From the sequence record PV340851.1: a DNA stretch of 64,000 nt. One strand, written 5' to 3'. The notes under the pieces are model-generated. The model saw only the letters and a list, made by a program, of their open reading frames with translations. It did no database searches and had not been told where the DNA came from. The translations under genes were made by a program, and so were the position numbers. The number at the start of each line of letters is the position of its first letter. Position 1 is the stretch's first letter. Shown here one piece after another: positions 1-43,684 of this stretch.

Positions 1-26
1 TTCCAAAAAAACAGAAAACTAAGAAA

Positions 27-96
27 TCTGAAAAACTCAAAAAGTCAAAAAACTTAAATTTTAAAGATTTTGAGTTTTTCAGAAATTTAAGTTTTA
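27..96. repeat. Two interleaved perfect inverted repeats in an AT-rich tract
   Basis: TCTGAAAAACTCAAAAA (27-43) is the reverse complement of 68-84. AAAACTTAAATT (49-60) is the reverse complement of 85-96. Confidence 0.85.
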
Positions 97-117
97 AACT
101 TTAACCATTTTTTACAA

Positions 118-363
118 ATGTTTGATTTTACAGATCAATTTGAGTCTTCTAATATTAGAAGAATTGTAGTTGGTAGAGAAGATGAGAATGTAGTTGAAAT
201 TATGTTTAAATCTTCAAAAATGAAGTATAATTATCAAATAAAAGAAGAAAATTGGGTTAATTCTTTGCAAACAGTGATTGATAGTAAAGAATCAGTCGGA
301 AAGTTTGTTAATTCTTCTATTAGAGAAGATAAACTAGAATTAATCAGTAAATTCTTGGTATAA
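118..363 (+). CDS. Hypothetical protein (81 aa), AT-rich
   Basis: ATG-started ORF with a plausible globular composition; no family recognised. Confidence 0.6.
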   Translation: MFDFTDQFESSNIRRIVVGREDENVVEIMFKSSKMKYNYQIKEENWVNSLQTVIDSKESVGKFVNSSIREDKLELISKFLV

Positions 364-366
364 TCA

Positions 367-373
367 CTAAATA
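367..373 (+). promoter_or_regulatory. T4-like late promoter (CTAAATA)
   Basis: Matches the gp55-type late motif; intergenic, 40 nt before the ORF at 413. Confidence 0.55.
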
Positions 374-412
374 ATGAATGTAATTCACAATTTAGTCTAA
401 TTAATCGTAATA

Positions 413-559
413 ATGTCTAGATCTCCATCATCAAAATCAACGAAGTACAATGTTGATGACTACGAAGACTTCGGTTATGAAGTAAAGAACGCCAAACGTT
501 ACAGCAACAAACAGAAGCAGCAACGTAAGTTCAAAGATTACTATCACGAAGAGGATTGA
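413..559 (+). CDS. Small hypothetical protein (48 aa, MSRSPSSKSTKYNVDDYEDFGY...)
   Basis: Translated by hand (below the ORF-track cutoff): ATG at 413 to TGA at 557-559. It lies between a late promoter and a terminator. Confidence 0.65.
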   Translation: MSRSPSSKSTKYNVDDYEDFGYEVKNAKRYSNKQKQQRKFKDYYHEED

Positions 560-609
560 CAACTAAATATGTGACACTAGTTGAACTGTCACACAATATT
601 ACCAAAGAG

Positions 610-647
610 AGGGTGATCGTGTATTGTATACATGGTTGCCCTTTTTT
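610..647 (+). terminator. Rho-independent terminator
   Basis: 15-bp stem (610-624 with 628-642, including four G-U pairs) and a 3-nt loop, followed by a T-run (642-647). Confidence 0.65.
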
Positions 648-808
648 ATTGCACACGACTGAACCTTACTTACCCAGTGGAGTTGAGTATACTTCTGGGG
701 TTAACTTTTGGCGTTTCGTTATTAAGAATGTTTTGGCTGCCTCAACCAGTTGGCAAAGTGGCACAGTGACCCCAGCGAATCGCCAAACCCCATGCTTATA
801 ATAGGTGC

Positions 809-3770: not shown

Positions 3771-4194
3771 GATTAAGGAATGGATTCAGAAGATATCTGA
3801 GTCTAACGAAGCACTTGGCGGTTATAGCATCTGTCCTTATGCAGGTGCTGCCAAGTATTCGGTCACAGAGTGTGACTTAAAAGATATTGTATGGAAGGTC
3901 GATACTAGCTCTGATGATGTACAAATCTTTATAGTAGAGGATGATTGTACGTTAGATGAGATTGTAGACTGGCGAAATGCGTTAAATAGAAGATATAAGG
4001 ACTACTTGTTCTTAGATGATCACATCGATGAAGCAACGTTTATCCAAGGTATACAGAGTAACTTTGGGAAAGGTAATATAATGATTGCCCAGAGACGTGA
4101 TGAGTTGTATAGAGCAAGAAATACTTTGCATAAGACAGAGTATTATAGTTACTGGTCGGAAGAACTTTACGGGAGAATTCTCAATGGCAAATAG
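3754..4194 (+). CDS. Hypothetical protein (ICPYA motif, possibly DUF1415-like)
   Basis: Start probably at the GTG at 3754 rather than 3715, which would overlap the 44-aa gene deeply. The W...ICPYA pattern recalls DUF1415. Confidence 0.6.
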   Translation: MDKVSKIKEWIQKISESNEALGGYSICPYAGAAKYSVTECDLKDIVWKVDTSSDDVQIFIVEDDCTLDEIVDWRNALNRRYKDYLFLDDHIDEATFIQGIQSNFGKGNIMIAQRRDELYRARNTLHKTEYYSYWSEELYGRILNGK

Positions 4195-31978: not shown

Positions 31979-34900
31979 ATGAGTTTTAACATTAATTCTG
32001 ATAAAGAATTTATCTCAGGGTCAAAACCTCAATTTATTGGTACAACTCAGTTCTCTATTCGCGCTGGTGGCGGTGTGGATGAGAAAGAAGTAGTTAGAGC
32101 ACTTCTCGATTCGGAGGAGAAACTACCTCGTGTTGGTATTAATAGAACGGGACAAAGGGTCAACAACATCAATGTGTTGACTAGTGGTTCTGGATACACC
32201 ACGGAGCCTACAGTTACCGTCAGTCCTCCCCCTGATAGTCCTACTGCCGTACAGGCACTAGCATCTGCTTTTATTTTCAATGGTCGCGTTGTTAGCATTG
32301 CTATCAATAATCCTGGTGCTGGTTATTCTACTGCACCTACTGTTACAATTACTGGTGGTAATGGTGGTGGTTGTTCTGCAGTCGCAGAACTTGATACCGT
32401 TGATTACGAACTTGACATTAACGGTGCAATTAGAACTTCTACGTCTATTATTTCCGACACGGCGAGAATTCTAAACCTGGATATCGACAACTTCGTTACT
32501 CCAGACTTAAACCTGAGAGGTCCAAACCTTAAGACTTATGTTAATAACTCAGGTACTATCTGGGTTGCTAATACTATTGTCCAAGAGAACTCCTATAGAT
32601 ACTTCGGTGCCAATGTCTACCAGGCATTGAACGCTGGTCAGACTGGTCCTGCTGCTCCTGAGCACCTGGATGGTATTGTCCTTAACGGCGAAGTCAACTT
32701 CAAGCACATTGGTTTCCGAGTCAATGATGAAAATGCATTTAAGTATGGTGAAACTGGCGAAGCAGGTATCTACCCACGTTCTATCACACCTCTACTAGGT
32801 GATAGATCTGACAAGATTGCAACTACAGAATACGTCCTCAACCTAGCAACGAATGACGTTGGTGGTCGTATCTACGTTTCCTCGCAGATTGGTAATGACC
32901 TAAACGATGGTCGATCTGCAGTCAACCCAGTTAGATCTGTCAAGAAAGCAGCACAATTGGCATGGGCAACGCCTGGTGTCAAAGAAACTATTATCATCTC
33001 TGGTGGTGACTACGTAGAAGATAACCCAATCTCTTTGCCACCTGATGCATCGGTTGTTGGTGATAACCTACGTCTAGTAATCATCAGACCTAACAACCCT
33101 GGCAAGCACATCTTTAAGTTCGGTGATAAGAACTACGTTACTGGTGTTACTTACCGAGATAAAATTGATGCTAACGGTGACGCTATTGCGACGTGGGACT
33201 TCGCAATGGTATTCGACGATAAGCAGCGTATCATCGTCGATTCTGAAGTCAATGGCGACTTCGGTGTCAACTTCCCAATTGGTCACCAAGTATTTGGTCC
33301 TGACAAATTTAGAATTAATGGATTCCAGAACAACACTGGTCTGTCAGCACTTGTCTCTGGACTAGAAGCAGTTGGTGTTAACACTGGTGCTAGAGGTATT
33401 ATTTCCAACGTTATCTTTACTGAGACATCAGGAAACAATGCATATCAAAATGGTTCTCTAGACATTGTTATTACCAGTGGTTCTTTCCTGGAAGGTGAAG
33501 GATTCAGATATATTATTTCTGGTAATGTAGGATCATCTGTTGGTAGTTCTACGGGAACTGTTGGAATTAATCAGATTGCCATTACTTCAGATCCAACACC
33601 ACTAGGTCTGATTGTTAGTTCTTATATCTACCTGGATGGTGTATCCAACTCCCAGGTATCAACTGGATTCTATGAAATCATTCAGATTGATGATGACAAT
33701 GCTCCTACCCAATGGGAACTTACCCTTGCTCCAATTCTAAATGCTACTGGATGGAGAGAGACTGAATCTGGAACTATCAATATCAGTAGTGCATCTATTA
33801 CTGAAGGTCAGTTTGACTCCACAAAGATCAACTCGATCCGAGCAGAAGGTGAAGTTGTATTTGAAGATGCAGACTTCGATACTTCTCTGCCTATTATTAG
33901 AATGGATTTCTCCAAGCAAGGAGATCCTTCTATTGCACAAGATGGTTTCCAGTCTGATATCTTTGGTAACGCAGAAGATCCAGGTGGTGTCATTCTGTAT
34001 ACCAGTGCTCTTGCTGGTAGACAAAACTTCCACGACTTCAAAGAAGGTCAAGAAATTCTAATTGAGGGTCTACCAACTGTATCTCCTGATCTGTCGTTCA
34101 TGAACGGCAGACAAAGGATTTATAAGGTTCTAGAAGATGCTGATGGTCGTGCAAGACGTTTCGTCATTCCCAAAAAAGTTCCTGCTAGTTTAGGACTTAA
34201 TGCTAACGATAACTTTGATCCTGGTCAGTTTGCAACTGTCAAATCTGCATCCAGATCGGTTACGTTCTCTCTGCTGAACTCTCCCAACAAATTCCCATTA
34301 TCTCAGCCTGTTGATAGAAGATTCCAGGACGCATGTACATTCATCCGTAACAACAGAGACTTCATCGCAGATGAAGTTGTAGGAAGAATCAACCGAGAGT
34401 TTGCTCAAGACTATCATTCTGTATATGAAATTGGTGGTCAGTCTTCTGCTTCCTATACGGCAACAGATGCTACCTATGATCCTAGCACTGGTGAGTTTGA
34501 AATCACCATTCCTACTCATGGTTTATCGGTTGGCGAAGGTATCAGAATTGCTGATGATTCTTTCGTGTTCACTTGTGCCATGGATGGTAACAAGACTGAA
34601 CACGCACTACCAGAAGCAGGTCAGTATGCTAGTGGCAAGTCTCTGCCTATCATATCAACCACTACAAATACTGTTACGGTCAACGTAGGTGCATCTGGTC
34701 CTAATGAGTTCTTCACACCTTCTAATGCTACCTACGATCCTACACTAGGTACACTACAATTAATTATTGGTGCTCATACACTATCACCTGGGGAAGGTGT
34801 TGTCATCGACGACAACTCTCTGTCCTTTAAGTGTGCAATGGATGGATATGATTCTACTAAAACATATCCACGCCCTAACATTGATCCATTTGCTGGTAGA

Positions 34901-37900
34901 TCTATTCCTATTCAGTCTGTTACAGCAGACTCTATTACTCTACAAGTTGGTATCTCCAGAGAGAATTTCTCCCTGACACCTACTACTGGCACGACATATG
35001 ATGCTGCAACTGGCGATCTGGTAATGAACGTTGGTCAGCATGGTCTTGGTGTTGGTCGTAATGTTGTTCTTAATGATAACTCTTTCACCTTTACGTGTGA
35101 TATAGATGGCAACGTTTCCCAGCACACCTATCCACGTCCTGGTACTGATCCATATGCTGGTAAGTCCATTGAGATTACAAATGTTGGATTTACTGAGCAT
35201 ACTCCTACCAACGTATCTTATAATGCTGCCACTGGCGTAGTTGAATTCACGATCAATAGTCATGGATTCAACAACGGCGACTATATTATGGTCGCTGATG
35301 GATCTCTGGTATTTACCTGCGATCTCGATGGTAACGTTGCACAGAAAGCATATCCCCGCGCTGGATATGATCTACCATCTAATCGTTGGATGGAAGTTTC
35401 TATTGTTAGTGGTGATGTATTCAGCATTAACGTTGGTCCTTCCTCTTACACAGGTACTCACACCTGGATCTCTGCCGCTTCTAATGCAATTAAGAGGCAA
35501 GATGGATATCTCACAATCAACGTTGGAAACGCTGGTTCTGCTGCTGGTTCTAACCACACATTTGTGGCTGCTACCAGTGGTGCTGTTAAGCATGAACCAA
35601 GATCGAATCACCTATTCCAAGGAGCAACTACAAACGCGGTTCGCCACCTTCCTCAGTCTGCTCATACTTATGTAAGATCCACATCTGGTGGTATTACTAC
35701 TGGTGGTTCTTCATTCAAGATCTATCTGGGTCAAACAGAGCATGAGCATACCTACGTAAGCGGTGGTACTGTCACCTTCGGTGGTTCTGACTACACGATG
35801 ACTAATTTTGAGTATGACGCTCTGGTAAGTGGTGTCGCCACTGTCACTACAACGAATTCTATCCCAGGTCTTGCTGAAGATGATATCGTAAAACTTGCTG
35901 ATATTCTAATCAGTTGTGAAGCTGGTCAAAAGGTTTATCCCTCTTATAGTTCACCTACTTCTGGTGGTAATGCTCTAGTAAGTAATGGCGATGAGCAATG
36001 TAAGCAAGACCTTGTTCACTTCATGAATGCTGTCATTCGTGACTTGGAATATGGCACTAACCATAATGTCATCGATGCTGCCAATAAGTATATTGTCAAT
36101 GAAAAGATTACATACATTGAAGATGAAATTGTACAGAACATGCGTGCTATTGAATATGCACGTCAACTTCTAATCTTTGCTGTTTGTAACTGGAGAACTG
36201 AAGACAGAACACCTGGAGATCCTATCTATGTTCCTCAGTATTCTTCTCTACCAAGATACTTTGACGACACTGTTATCACAGCAACAGCAGGTACTCCTGC
36301 TTGTGCTAACGTCGTATCTGCAATTGATGTTCTATCCTTCCTATGGGTAGATGTTATTACTAACAATGCATCTGGCACTCTACTGGATGCAGCATATCTG
36401 ATTATGCGTAACGCTGATCTAATTGCTGATCAGGCATTGATCGATACCAAACAACAGTATCCTACACTCAACCTTTCCGATATTATGGAAAGGAAGTGTA
36501 AGCGTGACATTAAGATTGTTCTAGAAGGTCTAGCAAAAGACCTTTGCTTGGGTGGTAACTCTGGTATCGTTGCTGTCGCTGAGTCTTACTTCTCTGGCAC
36601 TGCACTGACTGCAATTTCTGAAGCACAGAGACAAGAAACAATCTACGCTTACCAGAGAGTTCAGCAGCATGCTATTGCTGCTATGAGAAACTGGACTGGT
36701 GGTAATGTCATCGACCTTACTCCTTCTAGTGCTCAGTACAACTCCACGACAGGTCAACTTACTGTTACCTTCCCCGATCCACTTCTTCCTATTACTACAA
36801 ACGATAGAATTGCATTCAAGGAAGAGGCACTTACTTTCAACTGCTCATTCGGTAGCGGTGGCGATCATGCTAACCCACGCCCTGGTGATGCAAACTATGG
36901 CAAGTCGCAAGCAATCACTGGTGTAACATCTTCTGGTGGGGCAACTACCGTTACTACTAACGTAGGTGATGCTGGCGCTGCTGCTGGTCTTGTCCATACT
37001 CTCACTGCTGCTCTAACAGATGGTACGATCATTATCTATGATCCTATCGAAACTACCTCTGCTATTCCACAGTATGAAGATTGGAACATCCTTATTGATG
37101 TTAACGGTACTGCATCTTCTATTCAGGTTACTCCAACAGGTGCTACTTACAACCCTGCTAATGGTGTATTTGTTGTCACTGCAAACGGACACGGTGCATC
37201 TGTAGGTGATCAAGTTGCTTTTGATGCTGAGTCTTTCGTGTTCACTTGTGCCATGGATGGTAACAAGACTGAGCATGCTCTACCAGGACCAGGACAACCT
37301 GCATACAACAACCTCATCACTATTGATGCTGCTGACGCAAATACATTCACATTGAATGTCGGTGCATCTGGTCCCGATGTACAGTTCACACCAACTGGCA
37401 TTACCTATGATCCAGCAACTGGTGATATGGTCATGGAGATTGGACCACACTCCTTGTCTGTAGGCGAAGGTATTGTCATTGATGACAACTCATTGACGTT
37501 CACCTGTGCAATGGATGATAATCAATCCCAGAAGACGTACCCACGTCCTGGTATTGATCCATTTGCTGGGCGCTCTATGCTTATCACCAGCACCTCTGCA
37601 ACGACGATTACTGTCGATGCAGGCAAGTCTGGTCCTAACAAGTATTTTACACCTACTAACGCCACATATAACCCATCTACGGGCGACATGGTTCTGACTG
37701 TTGGTCAGCATGGTCTAGGTGTTGGACGCAACGTAACACTTGCAAACAACTCCTTCACCTTTACATGTGCTGCTGATGGCAACGCGACTCAGCACACCTA
37801 TCCTCGTTCTGGTCAGGATCCATTTGCAGATAACAAGTCTATCGCAATTACTGCGGTTGGTACTACATCCCATACTCCAACCAATGCTGCATATGATGCA

Positions 37901-40900
37901 TCAACTGGTATCGTTACTTTCACCTTGGCGAGTCATGGATTTGCTAACGGCGACTATATCAAGGTCGATGATGGTTCTCTAACCTACACATGTGCTCTGG
38001 ATGGCAATACTGTTCAGAAGTCTTACCCCCGTGCTGGATATGATTATCCATCTGGTCGCTGGTTGCAGATTTCTGGTGTAACAACCAACCAGTTTAAGAT
38101 CAACGTTGGTCCTTCTTCCTATACAGGCACTCATCTATTCGTCTCTGCTGCTGCAGACGCGATCAAACGTCAAGATGGTACATTCACCCTCAACGTTGGT
38201 ACATCGTCCGATACAAGCGCACATACCTTTGTTAGCGCAACTACGGATGCTGTGAGACATGAACCACAATCTGCTCATACATTCATCTCTGCAACGACAG
38301 ATGCAGTTAAGCATCTTCCACAGTCTGCTCATACATTCGTAAGAGCATCTCAAAATGCAATTGAAGTATATCCCCCAGGATCTGCTCCTCTGTGTGCTAG
38401 CGTCGCTTCTACGATTGCTACATCGATGAATCTGTTTGAATCTATCCTTGATGGTACTATTCAAGCAGGTGCAACTACCGTAACATATGGTACTTTGTAT
38501 GATACGTCGAATGTTATCACATATCCTGATTCTTACATCACTGATCAAAATGATGTAAGGATGGCAATCCGTGCTGATTACGATGACTATCCAATTATTG
38601 AGGCATCTCCATATACACAGAACGCATCTGTTATCTCCTTCCTAGGTGGTGGCGGTGCTGAAGTTGATGGTGACAAAGTTAAGCAACCTAACTGTCCTTT
38701 CCCTGGTCTTGAGATCGACGGAACGGCATCCTTCCCCAACCAGGGTAAGTCGATGGTTGCTGCAGCATTCACGATCGTCTCCTTCGGTGGTACAGGTTAC
38801 AAGATCGTCAACGATGGTTACACCCAGTTGGTTTCGGTCTTCGTTATCTTCTGTGCTGACGGTGTACTTTCTGAGTCTGGTGGTTATGCATCTATCACCA
38901 ACTCTGCTACCAACTTCGGTATCTATGCTCTGAGAGCAACTGGTTTCCGCAGAGATCCATACGTCTTTGACGCAGGTTACTTTGCTGGTTCTACATACGT
39001 TCGTGCAACAATCACTAACGTATCTCAGACACCTACAGGTAGAACAATCTTTACGATTGAGAACCTAGGTCGTGAACCACTGGAGCACTACATCCTCAAG
39101 ATTGATGGTCATACTAACTCCGATCCTGATACAGAATACTTCATTGATGAAGTTACTCAGGTCGGTGCTGGTCCACCATTTACCGCTACATGTATCTTTG
39201 ATGATGGTTCTGGTGGATCTGTCAGTGTCATTGATGACAGCAATGGACAAGCAGTTACACCTGCAAACCTAGATGGTGCATATGTTGGTCTACATAGACC
39301 TTCTATTGTTAACTCCTCCTCCCACACCTGGGAATTCGCAGGTTCGGGTACTAACTACCTAGCACTACCCGAGAACGGTGGTACTAAGGTTGAAGCAAAC
39401 GAACAGTTCAACGAAAACTACGGTCGTGTATACGTCTCTGGTACTGACGAACTGGGTGACTTCAAGGTTGGTACGTTCGCTAAGATCGAAAACAGAACTG
39501 GTGCTATTACCTTCACGGGTACGGTTACCATCTCGGAAGTTGAATTCTTGAAACTGAAAGGTGGCGACGTTGTTGTCACAGGTTTCGATGACTCTAACAC
39601 ACTGGGTGGTGCTAACTCTAGTAACAGTAAGATCCCAACTCAGAAGGCAGTTAGAGACTTCATCACCAACAACCTTGGTGCATACATCCAGAAGGAATAC
39701 TCAACCAACTCTGTTCCTAGAGCACTGGTCGAACTGACTGATTCTGGTAAGATCTCTCTCGATCAGATCCCTGCTCTGCGTCCTTTCCAGGTCTTTACAA
39801 TTCCCGATCAAGCAGCAAGACTTTCTATCGAAGGCGCACTCGCTGGTGACATCGCGATCCAACAGGACAATAACACTTCCTTCATTCTGAATAACGATAA
39901 CGGTAGTCAGTTCTTGGCATTCACCGTTGATCCAAGTCTGTCGTTCACCCTGAACGATATCTTCGAGGGTAGCGTATCTGGTGGTCAGATTCAGGCAACT
40001 GAGTACAGACAAGGTGTTCTCTATCAGATCAATATCACCGAAGCAGGTAGTGGTTATACACAACCTCCTGTTGTCACCATCTCTGGTGGTTCTCCACAGG
40101 CAGGTGCTGTTGCTGCAGTTGCAACTTGTACTATTGCTAATGGTCAAGTTGTTACGATTACCATCGAGGAACAAAACAGTTATGTTGGTGGTAAAGGTTA
40201 CACCGTTCAACCTGTTATCAACATTGCAGCGCCTCCAGGTGGTGGTACTCAAGCAGAAGCACTGGGTCTCATCGAAAGCAGACTTTATGGTAACATCGTC
40301 AACAACATCAAGATTGTTGATACTGATACATTCCAATCCAGTGATGTTCCTGCTGAGACAATCAATATTACTAGAGCGATTAACACCTCTTCCTCTAACG
40401 CTAATAATTGGGTATCCCTATCCACTACAACTGTTGATGCTAGAGACATTACTGGTGGTCCTATCGCGACTGACCTGCTGTCTACTAACTCCACAGCAGC
40501 AAACTCTAACACCTTCCTGAGAGGTGACCAATCTTATGCACTGGCAGTTCAGTCCCTGAAGGGTCCTGAAGAAAGATACTTTGCAAAACTGAGTGTTCCT
40601 GCTCAGTCTGGTGGTATCACAATGATCTTCGCTAGCAACCAGAACGCACTGAAAGGTCATATTATCAGAAACACTGTCACGGGTGTTCAGGAAGATACAA
40701 TTATTACCTCTGTTATCACAGAGAACAACTTGACTACGATTTCTTTCTCTCAAGAGAAAGCACTCACAGCAACCATTCCTACTGGAACTATTATCGAGTT
40801 CCAGAGACCACCTTCACCAATTAAATTTGACTCTACGTTTACCCAAGGTAACTTCGTTGAGGAAGTCATTATTGCTAACGGTGGTAGTGGATTTACCAAC

Positions 40901-43684
40901 GGTACATACTACAACCAAACTGTAACTGGTGGTAGTGGTACAGGATTCAAGGTAACATACATTGTTGCAAACAACAGCATCACTGAGGTCATTATTACCA
41001 CTGGTGGTGCTGGTTACACAACTGATTTCCAGGTCAACACTGCTCCGACTGAACTTGGTAGTGGTACTGGACTAGACCTCAGATGTAAGATCTCTACCAT
41101 CAACAGACAGTATGCAAACGTTACTGTTGATATCGACAGAGTTGTCTCTGCATCTCTCGACCCTGAGTATGGTACTACTGGTGTTGCTAGATTTGATAAG
41201 AATCAGTTCTTCATCGGTGATGCAGGTGACGGTTCTATCAGACTGAAGACCGCATCTAACAGCATCGACTCTGGTCTTGATGCTGACCTTCTGGATGGCA
41301 AGCAAGGTTCCTTCTACCAGAACGCTGGTAGTTTGTCTGCTGGTACACTGGACTCCGACAGATTGTCTGGTACATACAACATTGACATCTCTGGTCAGTC
41401 CCAGAAATGTATCAGATTGCTCACTGGTACTAACAACCCATCCTCTAACCCATCACCAAACACCTTCTCCGAAGGTATTATTTGTAACACCAAGAACAAC
41501 AATGCTGACCAGCTCCTAGACGGCGGCACCAAGCACATGGTGATGACGCTAAGACCTGGACCTGATGCTACCTTCGGTGGTATCAGACAGTTGGCATTTA
41601 CCGACAACGACAACATGTGGTTGCGTGGTTCTGGTACTGGTGTTACTACATTCGGTACATGGGCACAGATCTGGACATCCGAGAACGATGGTATTGACAC
41701 TGGACTAGATGCTGACAAACTGGATAACAGAGAAGGCACTTGGTATCAGAATGCTCTAAACATCAACTTCGGTACTATCTCTGCTAACAGACTGCCATCC
41801 TTCATGAAGGCATCTGGTTTCAGAAACACACTGAAGGTTAAGACATTCAACGGTGATCCTAAGTACAGAATCTATGTTTCTGGTAAGGTTCTAACTGCGT
41901 TCCCTGCTCCTAACCCATTCACTCCTGGTAACACTGTCAACCTGTACAACGCACAGTCTCAGGCAACAGGTACGATTGAGATCGATAATATCATTACAAA
42001 TGATGATCTAAATGATGACAGAAATGACTACTCGATTCTCATTGGTAGACTGACTAATGGTAACTTCCAGAACGCTGTTACGATTGGTACTGCTGCTCTA
42101 CCTGTTATCTTCCATGACTTTACTATTGAGGATGACAACGTTATCGATATCGTCACGATGGAAAGTGATGGTGGCACCGCTAACATTAAACTTGGTAGAA
42201 AGGACGGTGTAGCATCCAACCCTGGTATCTACTTCAGTTCTTCTCAGTTGGTTGCTAACTACAACTCTTCGATTGTTGCAACTGGTGGTAACGCAACTGA
42301 TGGTTCTGGTACACTGAACGCACAAGTTGCTGATGCTAATGGATTTAGCGTCAATGGCAACATCGTCTGGAACGAAGGTAACGTTCAGTTCAACTCTACT
42401 AACGTCCTGGGTACTGCAGTCATTCGTGACGCTACTGGATCTTTTGAAGCACATCGCATTACATTGGTTGCAGATGTTAACGGCATCGAAGGTGAACTGA
42501 TTGGTAAGGCATCTAAGAACGTACTGAAAGAAGGCGATACCATGACTGGTACGCTGAACATCAGTGGTGCTCAATCTAACTTCTCTGTACAAGGAACCTC
42601 TGGTTTCACAGGTAACGTCGTAATGTCGAATGACCTGACAGTTGCAACTGACGTTCTATTCGTTGATGCTTCTGACGAAGAGGTTGGCATCGGCACCACA
42701 AATCCACTGGACAAACTGTCCGTGATCGGAGGTGCATTTGTTATTAACTCTGGCAATTCTGGTAACAGCATCTCGACACCAAATGCACTAGGCATCACAT
42801 ATGATTCCAGTGCTGCTCGCGGTCACATTATCGTTGATCATCAATCTGCTTCTACATCTCTTGACTTCGAGACCTCTAATAGTGGTACTCTAAGTTCCAA
42901 GATGAGATTGGATAATGTTGGTCATGTCTTCCCATTATCTTCTACACAGGATCTTGGTAAGGATAGCACCAACGAAAGATGGAGAAATCTATACGCGAAG
43001 AACGTATATGCCGACGAGAAACTAACTATTGAAGATGCAGCATCTAATGCTGGTGCTCCTGCATACTTCCTAGGTGCATCTGGTTTCCGTAACTTCCGTC
43101 TTGGTAACCAACTGCTTGCAGATGACACATTTGAAATTACAGCAAGCACTGCAAATGGTGGTCAGGTCTGGGGTTCTACTCCTGCTCTGTTTATCCAAGG
43201 TGCTACAAACAGAATTGCAATAAATACTACTAACTTCAGTGGTACTGATACATCTGGCGCATCTCCAGTTGTTAGAGATTATCAACTGAACATCGAAGGT
43301 GACCTTAACTTCAACGGTCAACTCTTCCAGAACAACGAAGAATTCGTTACTTCTAGATGGACACTGAACAAGACTACCAACAATATCTGGAGAATTTCTA
43401 GAGTTGGTATTAACCAGGCAAACCCAGATTATCAACTGGATGTCAACGGCAGTCTCAATGTTCGTGGTTCTACATTCGTTTCTGGATCTAACACTGACGT
43501 AATAAGTGTTAACGGTGATGTCCAATATGTTGATTCCTACGGCGTCTTCAAGACAAATCGCAACACAGTTAACGAAAACGTTACTATTCCTGCTGCTACA
43601 AACGCAGTAAGCGCAGGTCCTTTGACTATAAATAATGGTGTAACAATTACCATTGCAAACGGTAGCTCCTGGAGTGTCGTATAA
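31979..43684 (+). CDS. Giant tail fibre/tailspike-like protein (3901 aa)
   Basis: Split beta-helix (YVSSQIGNDLNDGRSAVNP...; SPYTQNAS...), about 10 YD..TG..HG..FTC..DG..YPR repeats, DADLLDG/DADKLDN motifs, and a C-terminal NENVTIP...SAGPLTINNGVTITI..GSSWSVV typical of marine phage fibres. Confidence 0.85.
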   Translation: MSFNINSDKEFISGSKPQFIGTTQFSIRAGGGVDEKEVVRALLDSEEKLPRVGINRTGQRVNNINVLTSGSGYTTEPTVTVSPPPDSPTAVQALASAFIFNGRVVSIAINNPGAGYSTAPTVTITGGNGGGCSAVAELDTVDYELDINGAIRTSTSIISDTARILNLDIDNFVTPDLNLRGPNLKTYVNNSGTIWVANTIVQENSYRYFGANVYQALNAGQTGPAAPEHLDGIVLNGEVNFKHIGFRVNDENAFKYGETGEAGIYPRSITPLLGDRSDKIATTEYVLNLATNDVGGRIYVSSQIGNDLNDGRSAVNPVRSVKKAAQLAWATPGVKETIIISGGDYVEDNPISLPPDASVVGDNLRLVIIRPNNPGKHIFKFGDKNYVTGVTYRDKIDANGDAIATWDFAMVFDDKQRIIVDSEVNGDFGVNFPIGHQVFGPDKFRINGFQNNTGLSALVSGLEAVGVNTGARGIISNVIFTETSGNNAYQNGSLDIVITSGSFLEGEGFRYIISGNVGSSVGSSTGTVGINQIAITSDPTPLGLIVSSYIYLDGVSNSQVSTGFYEIIQIDDDNAPTQWELTLAPILNATGWRETESGTINISSASITEGQFDSTKINSIRAEGEVVFEDADFDTSLPIIRMDFSKQGDPSIAQDGFQSDIFGNAEDPGGVILYTSALAGRQNFHDFKEGQEILIEGLPTVSPDLSFMNGRQRIYKVLEDADGRARRFVIPKKVPASLGLNANDNFDPGQFATVKSASRSVTFSLLNSPNKFPLSQPVDRRFQDACTFIRNNRDFIADEVVGRINREFAQDYHSVYEIGGQSSASYTATDATYDPSTGEFEITIPTHGLSVGEGIRIADDSFVFTCAMDGNKTEHALPEAGQYASGKSLPIISTTTNTVTVNVGASGPNEFFTPSNATYDPTLGTLQLIIGAHTLSPGEGVVIDDNSLSFKCAMDGYDSTKTYPRPNIDPFAGRSIPIQSVTADSITLQVGISRENFSLTPTTGTTYDAATGDLVMNVGQHGLGVGRNVVLNDNSFTFTCDIDGNVSQHTYPRPGTDPYAGKSIEITNVGFTEHTPTNVSYNAATGVVEFTINSHGFNNGDYIMVADGSLVFTCDLDGNVAQKAYPRAGYDLPSNRWMEVSIVSGDVFSINVGPSSYTGTHTWISAASNAIKRQDGYLTINVGNAGSAAGSNHTFVAATSGAVKHEPRSNHLFQGATTNAVRHLPQSAHTYVRSTSGGITTGGSSFKIYLGQTEHEHTYVSGGTVTFGGSDYTMTNFEYDALVSGVATVTTTNSIPGLAEDDIVKLADILISCEAGQKVYPSYSSPTSGGNALVSNGDEQCKQDLVHFMNAVIRDLEYGTNHNVIDAANKYIVNEKITYIEDEIVQNMRAIEYARQLLIFAVCNWRTEDRTPGDPIYVPQYSSLPRYFDDTVITATAGTPACANVVSAIDVLSFLWVDVITNNASGTLLDAAYLIMRNADLIADQALIDTKQQYPTLNLSDIMERKCKRDIKIVLEGLAKDLCLGGNSGIVAVAESYFSGTALTAISEAQRQETIYAYQRVQQHAIAAMRNWTGGNVIDLTPSSAQYNSTTGQLTVTFPDPLLPITTNDRIAFKEEALTFNCSFGSGGDHANPRPGDANYGKSQAITGVTSSGGATTVTTNVGDAGAAAGLVHTLTAALTDGTIIIYDPIETTSAIPQYEDWNILIDVNGTASSIQVTPTGATYNPANGVFVVTANGHGASVGDQVAFDAESFVFTCAMDGNKTEHALPGPGQPAYNNLITIDAADANTFTLNVGASGPDVQFTPTGITYDPATGDMVMEIGPHSLSVGEGIVIDDNSLTFTCAMDDNQSQKTYPRPGIDPFAGRSMLITSTSATTITVDAGKSGPNKYFTPTNATYNPSTGDMVLTVGQHGLGVGRNVTLANNSFTFTCAADGNATQHTYPRSGQDPFADNKSIAITAVGTTSHTPTNAAYDASTGIVTFTLASHGFANGDYIKVDDGSLTYTCALDGNTVQKSYPRAGYDYPSGRWLQISGVTTNQFKINVGPSSYTGTHLFVSAAADAIKRQDGTFTLNVGTSSDTSAHTFVSATTDAVRHEPQSAHTFISATTDAVKHLPQSAHTFVRASQNAIEVYPPGSAPLCASVASTIATSMNLFESILDGTIQAGATTVTYGTLYDTSNVITYPDSYITDQNDVRMAIRADYDDYPIIEASPYTQNASVISFLGGGGAEVDGDKVKQPNCPFPGLEIDGTASFPNQGKSMVAAAFTIVSFGGTGYKIVNDGYTQLVSVFVIFCADGVLSESGGYASITNSATNFGIYALRATGFRRDPYVFDAGYFAGSTYVRATITNVSQTPTGRTIFTIENLGREPLEHYILKIDGHTNSDPDTEYFIDEVTQVGAGPPFTATCIFDDGSGGSVSVIDDSNGQAVTPANLDGAYVGLHRPSIVNSSSHTWEFAGSGTNYLALPENGGTKVEANEQFNENYGRVYVSGTDELGDFKVGTFAKIENRTGAITFTGTVTISEVEFLKLKGGDVVVTGFDDSNTLGGANSSNSKIPTQKAVRDFITNNLGAYIQKEYSTNSVPRALVELTDSGKISLDQIPALRPFQVFTIPDQAARLSIEGALAGDIAIQQDNNTSFILNNDNGSQFLAFTVDPSLSFTLNDIFEGSVSGGQIQATEYRQGVLYQINITEAGSGYTQPPVVTISGGSPQAGAVAAVATCTIANGQVVTITIEEQNSYVGGKGYTVQPVINIAAPPGGGTQAEALGLIESRLYGNIVNNIKIVDTDTFQSSDVPAETINITRAINTSSSNANNWVSLSTTTVDARDITGGPIATDLLSTNSTAANSNTFLRGDQSYALAVQSLKGPEERYFAKLSVPAQSGGITMIFASNQNALKGHIIRNTVTGVQEDTIITSVITENNLTTISFSQEKALTATIPTGTIIEFQRPPSPIKFDSTFTQGNFVEEVIIANGGSGFTNGTYYNQTVTGGSGTGFKVTYIVANNSITEVIITTGGAGYTTDFQVNTAPTELGSGTGLDLRCKISTINRQYANVTVDIDRVVSASLDPEYGTTGVARFDKNQFFIGDAGDGSIRLKTASNSIDSGLDADLLDGKQGSFYQNAGSLSAGTLDSDRLSGTYNIDISGQSQKCIRLLTGTNNPSSNPSPNTFSEGIICNTKNNNADQLLDGGTKHMVMTLRPGPDATFGGIRQLAFTDNDNMWLRGSGTGVTTFGTWAQIWTSENDGIDTGLDADKLDNREGTWYQNALNINFGTISANRLPSFMKASGFRNTLKVKTFNGDPKYRIYVSGKVLTAFPAPNPFTPGNTVNLYNAQSQATGTIEIDNIITNDDLNDDRNDYSILIGRLTNGNFQNAVTIGTAALPVIFHDFTIEDDNVIDIVTMESDGGTANIKLGRKDGVASNPGIYFSSSQLVANYNSSIVATGGNATDGSGTLNAQVADANGFSVNGNIVWNEGNVQFNSTNVLGTAVIRDATGSFEAHRITLVADVNGIEGELIGKASKNVLKEGDTMTGTLNISGAQSNFSVQGTSGFTGNVVMSNDLTVATDVLFVDASDEEVGIGTTNPLDKLSVIGGAFVINSGNSGNSISTPNALGITYDSSAARGHIIVDHQSASTSLDFETSNSGTLSSKMRLDNVGHVFPLSSTQDLGKDSTNERWRNLYAKNVYADEKLTIEDAASNAGAPAYFLGASGFRNFRLGNQLLADDTFEITASTANGGQVWGSTPALFIQGATNRIAINTTNFSGTDTSGASPVVRDYQLNIEGDLNFNGQLFQNNEEFVTSRWTLNKTTNNIWRISRVGINQANPDYQLDVNGSLNVRGSTFVSGSNTDVISVNGDVQYVDSYGVFKTNRNTVNENVTIPAATNAVSAGPLTINNGVTITIANGSSWSVV
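34445..38368 (+). repeat. Duplicated block of nested about 85-aa repeats (copy A about 34445-35767, copy B about 37121-38368)
   Basis: Four repeats followed by four HT[FY]V.A...A[VI] closing strands occur twice; a perfect 41-nt repeat lies at 34559-34599 and 37232-37272. Confidence 0.85.

What the first reader, a model, noticed from the sequence alone, without database searches (positions are those of the whole stretch)
34317..38460. Matryoshka architecture: repeats inserted inside one another, and the whole nest duplicated
Seen: four about 85-aa openers (Y[DN]..TG...HG...FTC..DG...[HK].YPR...) occur in a row. Their missing terminal strands then follow as four short closers (THTWISAASNAIKRQ, NHTFVAATSGAVKHE, NHLFQGATTNAVRHL, AHTYVRSTSGGI). 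The same 4+4 pattern recurs about 890 codons later. The first nest itself splits a helical repeat (RFQDACTFIRNNRDFIADE...|...EQCKQDLVHFMNAVIRDL). Each unit keeps His and Cys residues. Inference: recursive domain insertion builds an out-and-back arm in which closers pair with openers in reverse order, possibly with His/Cys metal sites clamping each level.
Basis: partly seen in the sequence, partly recalled or inferred. Interest (0 to 1): 0.65.

Follow-up and report, generated by a model that had tools for sequence, protein, structure and literature searches.

The report
Nested beta-barrel dolls in cyanophage fibre
A giant tail-fibre-like protein of a marine Synechococcus virus carries two arms of four small beta-barrel domains inserted one inside the next like Russian dolls. 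These arms sit in loops of helical domains that turn out to be relatives of the host's light-harvesting phycobiliproteins.

Summary
The window is Synechococcus phage Sf-CH3, and the stretch lies in gene SfCH3_88 (31979..43684, 3901 aa, "structural protein").

**The unit.** A ~92-residue unit, most like the E1 FCCH six-stranded barrel, stands alone or in plain tandem arrays in relatives. In SfCH3_88 it is split and self-inserted four deep, twice (aa 826-1241 and 1717-2131, 891 codons apart).

**Four lines of evidence give last-opened-first-closed pairing:**
- An HMM "bracket" parse of 151 relatives, which use four different insertion sites.
- The third opener lacks a strand that reappears right after the innermost unit.
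- Covariation is highest on the reverse-order diagonal.
- In AlphaFold2 models (pLDDT 93.9 and 86.6), single PDB barrels align to residue ranges 246-349, 171-378, 83-398 and 1-415.

**Cassette behaviour.** Orthologues carry 0, 1, 5 or 9 units, with clean empty sites at both loops.

**Metal clamp.** His17/Cys36/His82 are nearly invariant, but a metal clamp could not be tested.

**Precedent.** Six-level self-nesting is published for cyanobacterial RNA polymerase Si3, so this is a new variant of a known kind.

**Unexpected.** The host "helical repeat" is phycobiliprotein-like (profile E 2e-7; fold Z 13.4) and keeps the bilin-attachment Cys-x-Arg-Asp motif.

The parts
31979..43684 (+). Gene SfCH3_88, a giant virion 'structural protein' of 3901 aa. 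The C-terminal 1770 aa match a tail-fibre PHROG.
   Evidence: ORF list and translation. 100% identical to PV340851.1, where it is annotated as a structural protein. phrog_5342 tail fibre matches aa 2132-3901.
34319..36388 (+). Phycobiliprotein-like helical module 1 (aa 781-1470). Helix 1 is aa 782-808 and helices 2-5 are aa 1337-1462. All the beta material lies between helix 1 and helix 2.
   Evidence: AF2 model md71a71eb4bec has H2-28, strands 32-540 and helices 557-682. Phycoerythrin 5aqd_M aligns to model 1..681 with Z 13.4 and 149 aligned residues. It is paralogous to module 2.
34412..34438 (+). Unit 0, first piece: a strand equivalent to barrel strand 6 (around aa 812-820).
   Evidence: Empty-site orthologues join this strand directly to aa ~1244. 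HMM positions 58-88 then 2-51 occur in that order in five sequences. Barrel hits span model 31..538/549.
34454..34720 (+). Nest 1, opener of unit 1 (aa 826-914), cut at site 4, between the NVG strand and the HTF strand.
   Evidence: HMM 1-77. Barrel hits span model 41..462 of md71a71eb4bec.
34721..34978 (+). Nest 1, opener of unit 2 (aa 915-1000), cut at site 4.
   Evidence: HMM 1-78. The reassembled unit aligns with contiguous units.
34979..35206 (+). Nest 1, opener of unit 3 (aa 1001-1076), cut at site 3, inside the strand 6/7 hairpin.
   Evidence: HMM 1-66. The missing strand is found at aa 1175-1206.
35207..35500 (+). Nest 1, innermost unit 4 (aa 1077-1174), contiguous and complete.
   Evidence: HMM 2-92. 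UBA1 FCCH 2v31 aligns to model 292..394.
35501..35596 (+). Nest 1, remainder of unit 3 (aa 1175-1206): strand 7 plus the closing strand.
   Evidence: HMM 69-92; alignment.
35597..35650 (+). Nest 1, closer of unit 2 (aa 1207-1224).
   Evidence: Closer HMM; alignment.
35651..35701 (+). Nest 1, closer of unit 1 (aa 1225-1241).
   Evidence: Closer HMM. Barrel hits end at model 462.
35702..35992 (+). Unit 0, second piece (aa 1242-1338): strand 7, the closing strand, then strands 1-5. It is a circularly permuted, degenerate barrel that stays with the host when nest 1 is absent.
36365..36739 (+). Phycobiliprotein-like module 2, helices 1-4 (aa 1463-1587), with Lys-Cys-Lys-Arg-Asp at aa 1506-1510.
   Evidence: Profile A6 against PDB sequences gives 85 hits, all phycobiliproteins. 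The best is phycoerythrin alpha, E 2.1e-7, with the Cys aligned to the bilin-attachment Cys. PF00502 hits 7 of 18 members weakly.
36725..37048 (+). Single contiguous barrel unit (aa 1583-1690), inserted after helix 4 of module 2.
   Evidence: HMM 1-91. Present alone in 52 of 121 orthologue clusters.
37127..37393 (+). Nest 2, opener of unit 1 (aa 1717-1805).
   Evidence: HMM 1-77. Single barrels align to model 1..415 of m5b3d7e132fdc.
37394..37651 (+). Nest 2, opener of unit 2 (aa 1806-1891).
   Evidence: HMM 2-77. Barrels align to model 83..398.
37652..37879 (+). Nest 2, opener of unit 3 (aa 1892-1967), cut in the hairpin.
   Evidence: HMM 1-68. Barrels align to model 171..378.
37880..38173 (+). 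Nest 2, innermost contiguous unit 4 (aa 1968-2065).
   Evidence: HMM 1-92. 4p22_B (Z 8.1), 9mc4_A and 4hiz_A (both Z 7.9); 9mc4_A aligns to model 246..349, 4hiz_A to 246..351, and 4p22_B to 193..349.
38174..38263 (+). Nest 2, remainder of unit 3 (aa 2066-2095).
   Evidence: HMM 66-92. Covariation of C3 with O3 is the highest in its row.
38264..38317 (+). Nest 2, closer of unit 2 (aa 2096-2113).
   Evidence: HMM 79-92. Covariation of C2 with O2 is the highest in its row.
38318..38371 (+). Nest 2, closer of unit 1 (aa 2114-2131).
   Evidence: Closer HMM. Covariation of C1 with O1 is the highest in its row.
38372..38458 (+). Helix 5 of module 2 (aa ~2132-2160, starting Pro-Leu-Cys). It resumes the host domain after nest 2.
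   Evidence: In orthologues without nest 2, the segment before the nest joins directly to this helix. It is paralogous to the helix at aa ~1440-1462 of module 1.

Best explanation
SfCH3_88 is a giant tail-fibre-like virion protein.

**Host domains (shown).** Its middle part is built on two phycobiliprotein-like (globin-fold) helical domains.

**The barrel family (shown).**
- Loops of these domains carry small six-stranded beta-barrels of one family. The family has about 92 residues and its nearest known fold is E1 FCCH.
- The barrel's first and last strands lie next to each other. A complete barrel can therefore sit in a loop of another barrel.
- This has happened recursively.

**Chain path (shown).**
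- The chain runs out through the N-terminal parts of units 1, 2 and 3.
- It then makes the complete unit 4 at the far end.
- It returns, supplying the missing C-terminal strand(s) of units 3, 2 and 1 in that order.
- Nest 1 additionally sits in a hairpin of a circularly permuted barrel, unit 0. That makes six domains nested in aa 781-1470.

**Cassette behaviour (shown).** The chain enters and leaves each nest at one point. So a whole four-barrel nest behaves as a cassette. It was copied to a second, non-equivalent loop in this phage and is present or absent in orthologues.

**Inferred, not shown.**
- Every inter-barrel junction is crossed by two chain segments. The nest should therefore be a stiff side arm of four barrels that projects from the fibre.
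- Its most likely job is surface decoration or reversible adhesion to the host envelope. This is by analogy with outward-facing FCCH-like barrels on phage tails and the barrel domain of phage endosialidase.
- The nearly invariant His17, Cys36 and His82 (the last one on the closing strand) probably form a metal site or another staple that locks the returning strand.
For: **Grammar in relatives.**
- The unit HMM gives 810 real elements against 1 in shuffled copies.
- Partial elements follow stack order. P0001 parses as (4 (4 (3 () 3) 4) 4) twice, plus one contiguous unit.
- P0002 carries six opener clusters of four, each followed by four HTF closers on reading the sequence; the automatic parse closes four of them to depth 4.
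- Relatives use four insertion sites (HMM positions ~21, ~52, ~67, ~77). Examples are P0007 [1-76][1-66][1-21][1-92][21-92] and P0055.
- A strict parse gives 134 stand-alone units, and 14, 5 and 9 closed nests of depth 2, 3 and 4.
- Where the order is informative, last-in-first-out fits 46 of 79 continuations. First-in-first-out fits 13 of 79.

**Reassembly.** Units rebuilt in reverse order align column for column with contiguous units. Opener 3's missing strand reappears directly after unit 4.

**Covariation.** The APC-corrected mutual information of each closer is highest with its reverse-order opener. Values are 15.7, 6.3 and 16.3; all other combinations are zero or below. This assignment is the best of the 24 possible.

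**Structure.**
- AF2 of nest 2 has pLDDT 93.9 and pTM 0.84, with every closer predicted as a strand.
- VIA-align maps single ~90-aa PDB barrels, with 62-84 aligned residues each, onto model ranges 246..349, 171..378, 83..398 and 1..415.
- The independent model of aa 781-1470 (pLDDT 86.6) gives ranges 292..394, 41..462, 31..538 and, for the helical domain, 1..681.

**Cassette.**
- Empty-site orthologues exist for both nests, with clean junctions.
- Of the 121 proteins scanned (the 120 best orthologue clusters listed plus P0001 itself), 28 have 0 units, 52 have 1, 31 have 5 and 4 have 9. Protein length rises in step.
- Unit i of nest 1 matches unit i of nest 2 best.

**Invariant residues.** Cys36 is present in 575 of 577 elements, Pro48 in 577 of 577, His17 in 469 of 504 and His82 in 292 of 302.
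Against: - No coordinates or contact map could be read. The pairing in the models is inferred only from the first and last aligned residues of VIA-align hits.
- Units 2 and 3 of nest 1 did not appear among the top 50 rows for the larger model.
- The automated bracket parse is noisy. 33 of the 79 informative continuations did not fit last-in-first-out, largely because of fragments and truncated local alignments.
- AF2 and the covariation test share one alignment of only 44 sequences. Mosaic recombination could also make outer pieces co-vary.
- The oligomeric state is unknown. A monomer model cannot exclude closing strands being exchanged between chains.
- The adhesion role has no direct support. 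The distal unit 4 is the least variable unit (entropy 0.90 against 1.17 for unit 1), which is not what a receptor-binding tip under diversifying selection would show.
- The metal site is pure inference.
- Complex prediction, intended for a strand-complementation test, was unavailable.
Confidence: 0.85

Rival explanations
1. There are two unrelated repeat types. The ~85-aa openers are complete domains in tandem. The short HTF repeats form their own sheet or fibre segment, for example a trimeric beta structure like a fibre shaft, and do not complete the openers.
For: On the sequence alone, four long repeats followed by four short ones could be read this way. Phage fibres often contain short trimeric repeats; this rests on general knowledge and was not tested here.
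Against: - In stand-alone units of relatives, the HTF strand is part of every unit (134 contiguous units).
- Opener and closer numbers match within each of the six nests of P0002 on manual reading; the automatic parse is noisier, and some complete relatives such as P0011 show fewer detected closers.
- Cuts at HMM positions 21, 52 and 67 fall inside the core. They are always followed later by the exact remainder.
- Single PDB barrels align across opener plus late closer.
- Covariation lies on the reverse-order diagonal.
Confidence: 0.03
2. The sequence grammar is the same, but in the assembled (probably trimeric) fibre the returning strands complete the barrels of a neighbouring chain. This would be three-dimensional domain swapping, so the nest would be an inter-chain zipper and not a monomeric arm.
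For: - Tail fibres are usually trimers (general knowledge).
- The downstream genes are fibre-tip or assembly-like.
- Neither the monomer AF2 models nor covariation can tell intra-chain from inter-chain pairing.
Against: - The monomer models are very confident (pLDDT 93.9, pTM 0.84). That is unusual for segments that need partner chains.
- The linkers between an inner unit's end and the outer unit's remainder are only 0-4 residues, which favours return along the same arm.
- Contiguous single units fold as ordinary monomeric barrels in the model.
Confidence: 0.08
3. The architecture is as described, but the arms are passive struts or spacers. They would set fibre geometry or dock other virion proteins and would not bind the host surface. 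The His/Cys/His residues would be core or hydrogen-bond residues, not a metal site.
For: - The distal unit is the most conserved.
- Nests are dispensable in many orthologues: 80 of 121 clusters have none.
- Six of 129 contiguous units lack His17 while keeping Cys36 and His82.
Against: - A single, 99.7% invariant Cys with two ~95% invariant His in an extracellular domain that otherwise diverges to ~30% identity is hard to explain by packing alone.
- Outward-facing FCCH-like barrels on phage tails are described as surface decorations (PMC13576161).
Confidence: 0.3

Closest known systems
Recursive insertion of hybrid-motif (SBHM/HABAS) domains in the Si3 region of the cyanobacterial RNA polymerase beta-prime subunit
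   Same: One small beta domain family is inserted into copies of itself. This gives A1-B1-C-B2-A2 patterns up to six levels deep and forms an elongated arm (PMC13114784, read).
   Different: - The fold, the protein and the biology are all different: a cellular enzyme there, a virion fibre here.
- The phage barrels use at least four insertion sites.
- The whole nest behaves as a cassette that is duplicated within one protein and is present or absent between orthologues.
- The host domain here is phycobiliprotein-like.
E1 FCCH-type six-stranded beta-barrel, and FCCH-like decoration domains of phage tail proteins (also the barrel domain of phage phi92 endosialidase)
   Same: - These are the best structural matches of a single unit: 4p22_B Z 8.1 (77 aligned, rmsd 2.5), 9mc4_A Z 7.9 and 4hiz_A Z 7.9.
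- The nearest named Atlas cluster carries PF16190.
- FCCH barrels face outward on siphophage tail tubes (PMC13576161).
   Different: - Sequence identity is only 12-15%.
- There is no Pfam hit to PF16190 or to any other family.
- Z around 8 is in the range the tool calls 'middling'.
- The His/Cys/His signature and the self-nesting are not features of FCCH.
Phycobiliproteins (PF00502; phycoerythrin and phycocyanin alpha and beta subunits)
   Same: - The host helical module matches them by profile: 85 of 85 PDB hits, best E 2.1e-7.
- It also matches by fold: Z 13.4, 149 aligned residues.
- It keeps the Lys-Cys-x-Arg-Asp motif, aligned to the bilin-attachment Cys. The motif is present in 173 modules of 43 phage proteins.
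   Different: - The module is part of a 3901-aa virion protein, not a ~165-aa antenna subunit.
- It lacks the N-terminal X/Y helices: the alignment starts at chain residue ~35.
- It does not reach Pfam's cut-off in this protein.
- Module 1 alone gives no sequence hit.
- No evidence exists that a bilin is attached.
Needle domain of the phage T4 long-tail-fibre tip (gp37), with its out-and-back chain path and His-coordinated iron ions
   Same: An elongated fibre part in which the chain runs out and comes back, with conserved histidines. This comparison rests on my own knowledge of the published structure and was not tested here.
   Different: - T4 gp37 is an intertwined trimer with His-x-His motifs.
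- Here the histidines occur singly in an HTF strand, together with a Cys.
- The units are discrete barrels that are confidently predicted from a single chain.

Membership tests
Nested (recursive) domain insertion architecture | A domain's sequence is interrupted, and its missing C-terminal part is found after the insert. | tested here: met
   HMM elements 1-77, 1-78 and 1-66 are later completed by 69-92 and by the closers. Relatives are cut at positions 21, 52, 67 and 77 and completed later.
Nested (recursive) domain insertion architecture | The inserted piece is itself a complete domain, or a complete nest. | tested here: met
   The innermost unit covers HMM 1-92 and aligns to single PDB barrels at model 246..349. 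The same unit stands alone 134 times in relatives.
Nested (recursive) domain insertion architecture | Closing order is the reverse of opening order, and the discontinuous pieces form one domain in space. | tested here: met
   VIA-align ranges are 171..378, 83..398 and 1..415, with 62-84 aligned residues each. Covariation lies on the reverse-order diagonal. Last-in-first-out fits 46 of 79 continuations; first-in-first-out fits 13 of 79. No contact map could be read.
E1 FCCH domain (Pfam PF16190) | Sequence match to the family model above its cut-off. | tested here: not met
   There is no Pfam family for the whole protein at E 0.1 or below. Three contiguous units scanned at E 10 or below gave only a sub-threshold DUF7243 match.
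E1 FCCH domain (Pfam PF16190) | Six-stranded closed antiparallel barrel superposable on FCCH. | tested here: inconclusive
   Z is 7.9-8.1, rmsd 2.4-2.5, with 75-77 aligned residues. The tool warns that Z under 8 may reflect only a common arrangement. FNR-type and EF-Tu domain-2 barrels score Z 5-6.
Phycobiliprotein family (PF00502) | Significant sequence similarity to phycobiliproteins. | tested here: met
   Profile A6 against PDB sequences: best E 2.1e-7, and all 85 hits are phycobiliproteins. Three giant relatives carry precomputed PF00502 hits.
Phycobiliprotein family (PF00502) | This protein's own modules reach Pfam's curated cut-off. | tested here: not met
   The window's module 2 alone gives 0 families. 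Seven of 18 relatives hit weakly, best E 0.0021. Profiles of module 1's helices 2-5 and of helix 5 gave no phycobiliprotein hit.
Phycobiliprotein family (PF00502) | Globin-like helical fold. | tested here: met
   5aqd_M Z 13.4 (149 aligned, rmsd 3.0), 8or7_A Z 12.1 and 4xxi_A Z 12.0.
Phycobiliprotein family (PF00502) | Conserved bilin-attachment Cys with the neighbouring Arg-Asp. | tested here: met
   The Cys-x-Arg-Asp motif is aligned to the attachment Cys of phycoerythrin alpha. The motif is present in essentially all of the 173 modules examined.
Phycobiliprotein family (PF00502) | Covalently bound bilin chromophore. | not testable with these tools
   This needs spectroscopy or mass spectrometry of virions or recombinant modules.
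T4 gp37-type metal-stapled fibre needle | His-x-His motifs repeated along an intertwined trimer. | tested here: not met
   The closers carry a single His in His-Thr-Phe. A second His lies 12 residues later in only some closers. The trimer question was not tested.

The most novel reading that the evidence does not exclude
The helical domains that host the nests, and up to 13 tandem copies of them in sister giant virion proteins, are captured phycobiliprotein domains that still bind a bilin at the conserved Cys-x-Arg-Asp. On this reading the phage's own bilin reductase and CpeT-type lyase would serve, at least partly, to pigment the virion's fibres rather than the host antenna. The myocyanophage-restricted 'auxiliary' bilin genes would then have a structural client, and the virus particles would be coloured or light-responsive. 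The nested barrels would be side arms displayed from these pigment-type domains.
Probability: 0.15. Interest if true: 0.92.

Novelty: new variant of a known kind. Interest (0 to 1): 0.7.

Why it matters
**1. A second natural case of deep self-nesting.** One small domain is inserted into copies of itself, here six domains deep. Unlike the RNA polymerase case, natural 0-, 1- and 2-nest variants exist, and four insertion sites are used. This gives ready material for studying how discontinuous domains fold and how such architectures evolve. It also offers a design principle for stiff, loop-insertable protein rods.

**2. A defined, unnamed domain family.**
- It is a cyanophage-specific barrel family with an invariant His/Cys/His signature.
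- No Pfam model matches it, and phrog_1276 lists it as 'unknown function'.
- It occurs in virion proteins of 326 sequenced marine cyanophages.

**3. A host-derived scaffold.**
- The scaffold is homologous to the host's light-harvesting phycobiliproteins and keeps the chromophore-attachment motif.
- I found no paper describing this.
- If the modules bind bilin, the accepted role of phage bilin genes would need revising.
- If they do not, it is still a clear case of a host antenna protein fold recruited into a virus particle.

Tried and rejected
It was intended as a complementation test: openers 1-3 as one chain, the returning strands as the partner. Nothing was folded.
- **Foldseek against PDB** with the whole nest gave only strings of FN3-like domains with TM 0.16 or below. 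This was uninformative.
- **Sequence search of PDB** with nest 1 gave only chance Kelch/designed-propeller matches with no significant stretch.
- **Pfam on the whole protein** gave nothing. Pfam on single units gave nothing either.
- **Idea that the distal unit is a hypervariable receptor-binding tip:** not supported. It is the least variable unit.
- **Idea that nests at loop 1 and loop 2 form two clean clades** (one old duplication followed by losses): the tree is mixed, so no order of events is claimed.
- **Idea that the second conserved Cys** (Pro-x-Cys at the start of helix 5) matches the beta-155 bilin site of phycobiliproteins: a profile of that segment hit no phycobiliprotein. The resemblance came from memory and is dropped.
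- **Profile of module 1, helices 2-5,** hit nothing in PDB.
- **Idea that the cpeT-pcyA-giant-gene neighbourhood is conserved:** it is not. That position is a variable island of tRNAs and auxiliary genes in other cyanophages. The adjacency in Sf-CH3 is therefore weak evidence.
- **No whole genome is held for the window**. The phage record was searched through its locus handle instead.
- **The primary paper on the phage CpeT lyase** (PMC5336146) is not held.
- **Model coordinates are not exposed**. Distances within the His/Cys/His triad and a true contact map could not be computed.

Full report
**Where this is**

- The window is 100% identical to Synechococcus phage Sf-CH3 (PV340851.1). This is a T4-like cyanophage isolated on Synechococcus WH8102 from a sponge (PMC12284385).
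- The finding lies inside one ORF, 31979..43684, 3901 aa. It is annotated SfCH3_88 'structural protein'.
- Its last 1770 residues match a tail-fibre PHROG.
- The three genes downstream match fibre-tip/assembly PHROGs.

**Checking the observation**

- Four openers lie at aa 826-1153 and four closers at aa 1160-1239.
- The second set spans aa 1717-2131 and starts 891 codons later.
- The two helical words are at aa 781-799 and 1339-1356.
- A ninth unit at aa 1583-1690 is contiguous: its opener is followed at once by its closer.
- When each opener is joined on paper to the closer predicted by reverse order, all eight units align column for column with the contiguous ones.
- Opener 3 stops one strand early. 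The missing strand, plus a closer, appears directly after the innermost unit, at aa 1175-1206 and 2066-2095.
- This detail alone is hard to explain without insertion of unit 4 into a hairpin of unit 3.

**Relatives**

A full scan of 1.84 billion representative proteins with nest 1 gave 481 hits. I built a 92-position model of the unit from 130 contiguous copies.

- It finds 810 elements in the 151 proteins held, against 1 in shuffled copies. A 16-residue closer model finds 355 against 2.
- Some relatives have only plain tandem units. P0018 and P0022 have nine each, and P0050, P0065 and P0070 have six each. So the unit, including its HTF strand, is an autonomous domain.
- Other relatives carry partial elements that behave like brackets.
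  - P0002 has six clusters of four openers, each followed by four closers on reading the sequence; the automatic parse closes four of them to depth 4.
  - P0007 reads [1-76][1-66][1-21][1-92][21-92].
  - P0055 has one unit with two inserts, one of which is itself interrupted.
  - P0020, parsed by hand, reaches about six levels.
- Four insertion sites are used, at model positions ~21, ~52, ~67 and ~77.
- In a strict parse, closed host units used these sites 10, 6, 24 and 41 times. There were 14, 5 and 9 closed nests of depth 2, 3 and 4.
- Where the stack holds different cut types, last-in-first-out fits 46 of 79 continuations. First-in-first-out fits 13.
- The misfits are mostly metagenomic fragments and truncated local alignments, so this number is a lower bound and is noisy.

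**Covariation**

- In a 44-sequence alignment of nests, corrected mutual information between each returning piece and the four outgoing pieces is highest for the reverse-order partner.
- The values are 15.7 (C3 with O3), 6.3 (C2 with O2) and 16.3 (C1 with O1). Every other combination is zero or below.
- This assignment is the best of the 24 possible.
- Shared recombination history of the outer pieces could contribute to the signal.

**Structure**

- AlphaFold2 on nest 2 gave mean pLDDT 93.9 and pTM 0.84. The model is all-beta and every closer is a strand.
- Coordinates are not exposed. I therefore used VIA-align's reported first and last aligned residues.
- Single ~90-residue PDB barrels align, with 62-84 residues each, to four model ranges:
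  - 246..349 (unit 4);
  - 171..378 (unit 3, skipping unit 4);
  - 83..398 (unit 2);
  - 1..415 (unit 1).
- The best fold matches are listed here:
  - the FCCH barrel of ubiquitin E1 (4p22_B: Z 8.1, rmsd 2.5, 77 aligned; 9mc4_A: Z 7.9);
  - the barrel domain of phage phi92 endosialidase (4hiz_A: Z 7.9);
  - FNR-type and EF-Tu domain-2 barrels, at Z 5-6.
- The protein-language Atlas independently points to viral clusters carrying PF16190 E1_FCCH.
- There is no Pfam membership. The resemblance is at fold level only.
- FCCH-like barrels are known as outward-facing decorations on siphophage tail tubes (PMC13576161).

**The nest is a cassette**

- Flanks of 80 IMG/VR loci show natural empty sites.
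  - In L014, L017, L072, L075 and L078, the sequence before nest 1 joins directly to aa ~1244.
  - In L005, L007, L008, L018 and L022, the sequence before nest 2 joins directly to the helix after it.
- Of the 121 proteins scanned (the 120 best orthologue clusters listed plus P0001 itself), the counts are as follows.

| Barrel units | Clusters | Median length (aa) |
|---|---|---|
| 0 | 28 | 2955 |
| 1 | 52 | 3046 |
| 5 | 31 | 3484 |
| 9 | 4 | about 3840-3900 |

- Unit i of nest 1 is closest to unit i of nest 2. So the nest was copied as a whole.
- The two nests lie in non-equivalent loops of the two host modules.
- A tree of nests does not separate the two loops cleanly. I make no claim about gain versus loss.

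**What nest 1 sits in**

- The ~97 residues after nest 1 stay with the host in empty-site variants.
- Together with the strand just before the nest, they match the unit model in the order 58-88 then 2-51, in five sequences. The scores are weak (5-15 bits each) but consistent.
- Barrel hits span model residues 31..538/549 of the second AF2 model.
- I read this as a circularly permuted, degenerate barrel ('unit 0') whose strand 6/7 hairpin holds nest 1.
- Counting the helical host, six domains are nested in aa 781-1470.

**The helical host is phycobiliprotein-like**

- The second AF2 model (aa 781-1470, pLDDT 86.6) has one helix before the beta part and four after it.
- These helices align together, as model range 1..681, to single globin-fold domains:
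  - phycoerythrin 5aqd_M: Z 13.4, 149 aligned, rmsd 3.0;
  - allophycocyanin 8or7_A: Z 12.1;
  - the ApcE bilin domain 4xxi_A: Z 12.0;
  - globin-coupled sensors, at about Z 11.
- This confirms that the beta material splits one helical domain.
- A profile of the uninterrupted part of module 2 (aa 1463-1587 plus 17 relatives) hits only phycobiliproteins in the PDB. There are 85 of 85 such hits, and the best is phycoerythrin alpha at E 2.1e-7.
- In that alignment, the module's Lys-Cys-x-Arg-Asp lies on the bilin-attachment cysteine and its Arg-Asp neighbours.
- Pfam's Phycobilisome model hits 7 of the 18 members weakly, but not this protein's own copy.
- The Cys-x-Arg-Asp motif is present in essentially all of 173 modules in 43 phage proteins.
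- Some giant relatives have 12-13 modules in tandem and carry precomputed PF00502 hits.
- Another giant virion gene of Sf-CH3, SfCH3_28, lies outside the window and has five modules.
  - It lies just downstream of a bilin reductase gene.
  - A CpeT-type lyase gene sits about 1.8 kb upstream.
  - That neighbourhood is not conserved in other cyanophages, so the adjacency is weak evidence.
- I found no paper describing phycobiliprotein-like domains in cyanophage virion proteins.
- A review notes that only myocyanophages carry the bilin genes and CpeT (PMC10452541).

**How it most likely works**

- *Shown:* the sequence grammar, the cassette behaviour, and the confident nested model.
- *Inferred:*
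  - Each nest is a stiff side arm of four barrels whose every junction is crossed twice by the chain.
  - It projects from a loop of a phycobiliprotein-like domain of the fibre.
  - It probably acts in surface decoration or reversible host binding.
  - The nearly invariant His17/Cys36/His82 probably bind a metal or otherwise staple the closure. The last of these is on the returning strand. The counts are Cys 575 of 577, His17 469 of 504 and His82 292 of 302.
- *Against a receptor-tip role:* the distal unit is the least variable.

**Novelty**

- Nested insertion is a known principle. Six-level self-nesting of hybrid-motif domains in cyanobacterial RNA polymerase Si3 has been published (PMC13114784).
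- This case is new in four ways. It involves a different fold, in a virus particle, with several insertion sites and a mobile four-deep cassette.
- I therefore rate it a new variant of a known kind.
- The phycobiliprotein-like scaffold is the more surprising result. It deserves its own follow-up.

Noticed in passing
window 36365-36739 (aa 1463-1587) and 34319-34402 plus 35987-36388 (module 1): The 'helical repeat' is a phycobiliprotein-like globin-fold domain. It keeps the Lys-Cys-x-Arg-Asp bilin-attachment motif (Cys aa 1341 and 1507). A profile search hits only phycobiliproteins (best E 2.1e-7), and the fold match is Z 13.4.
   Followed up: yes
Outside the window: PV340851.1 19578-34862 (locus L085 7579-22863): A second giant virion gene, SfCH3_28 (4323 aa), has five of the same phycobiliprotein-like modules; one reads Gly-Lys-Cys-Glu-Arg-Asp-Ile-Gly-Tyr-Phe. 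It lies directly downstream of a phycocyanobilin:ferredoxin oxidoreductase gene. A CpeT-like lyase gene sits about 1.8 kb upstream. The neighbourhood is not conserved in other cyanophages.
   Followed up: partly
Relatives P0183 (6823 aa), P0237 (5499 aa), P0251 (5825 aa): These giant metagenomic phage proteins have 12-13 tandem phycobiliprotein-like modules and no barrel units. They carry precomputed Pfam PF00502 hits.
   Followed up: partly
window 34412-34438 and 35702-35992: A degenerate barrel whose segments run in the order strands 6-8 then strands 1-5, which is a circular permutation. It is the direct host of nest 1. It keeps Cys36, Pro48 and His82 but has lost His17.
   Followed up: partly
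window 32159-32437 (aa ~61-153) and about aa 2690-2960 of the same protein: Short Gly-x-Gly-Tyr-Thr...Pro-x-Val-x-Ile...Gly-Gly repeats occur near both ends of the protein. The N-terminal ones match PHROGs labelled head closure Hc2 and baseplate wedge. Their fold and role were not examined.
   Followed up: no
Loci L002-L081 (IMG/VR relatives): A tree of four-deep nests does not separate those in loop 1 from those in loop 2. This hints at exchange or conversion between nests or between phages.
   Followed up: partly
I did not examine it. The barrel-unit motif is absent from that ORF.
   Followed up: no
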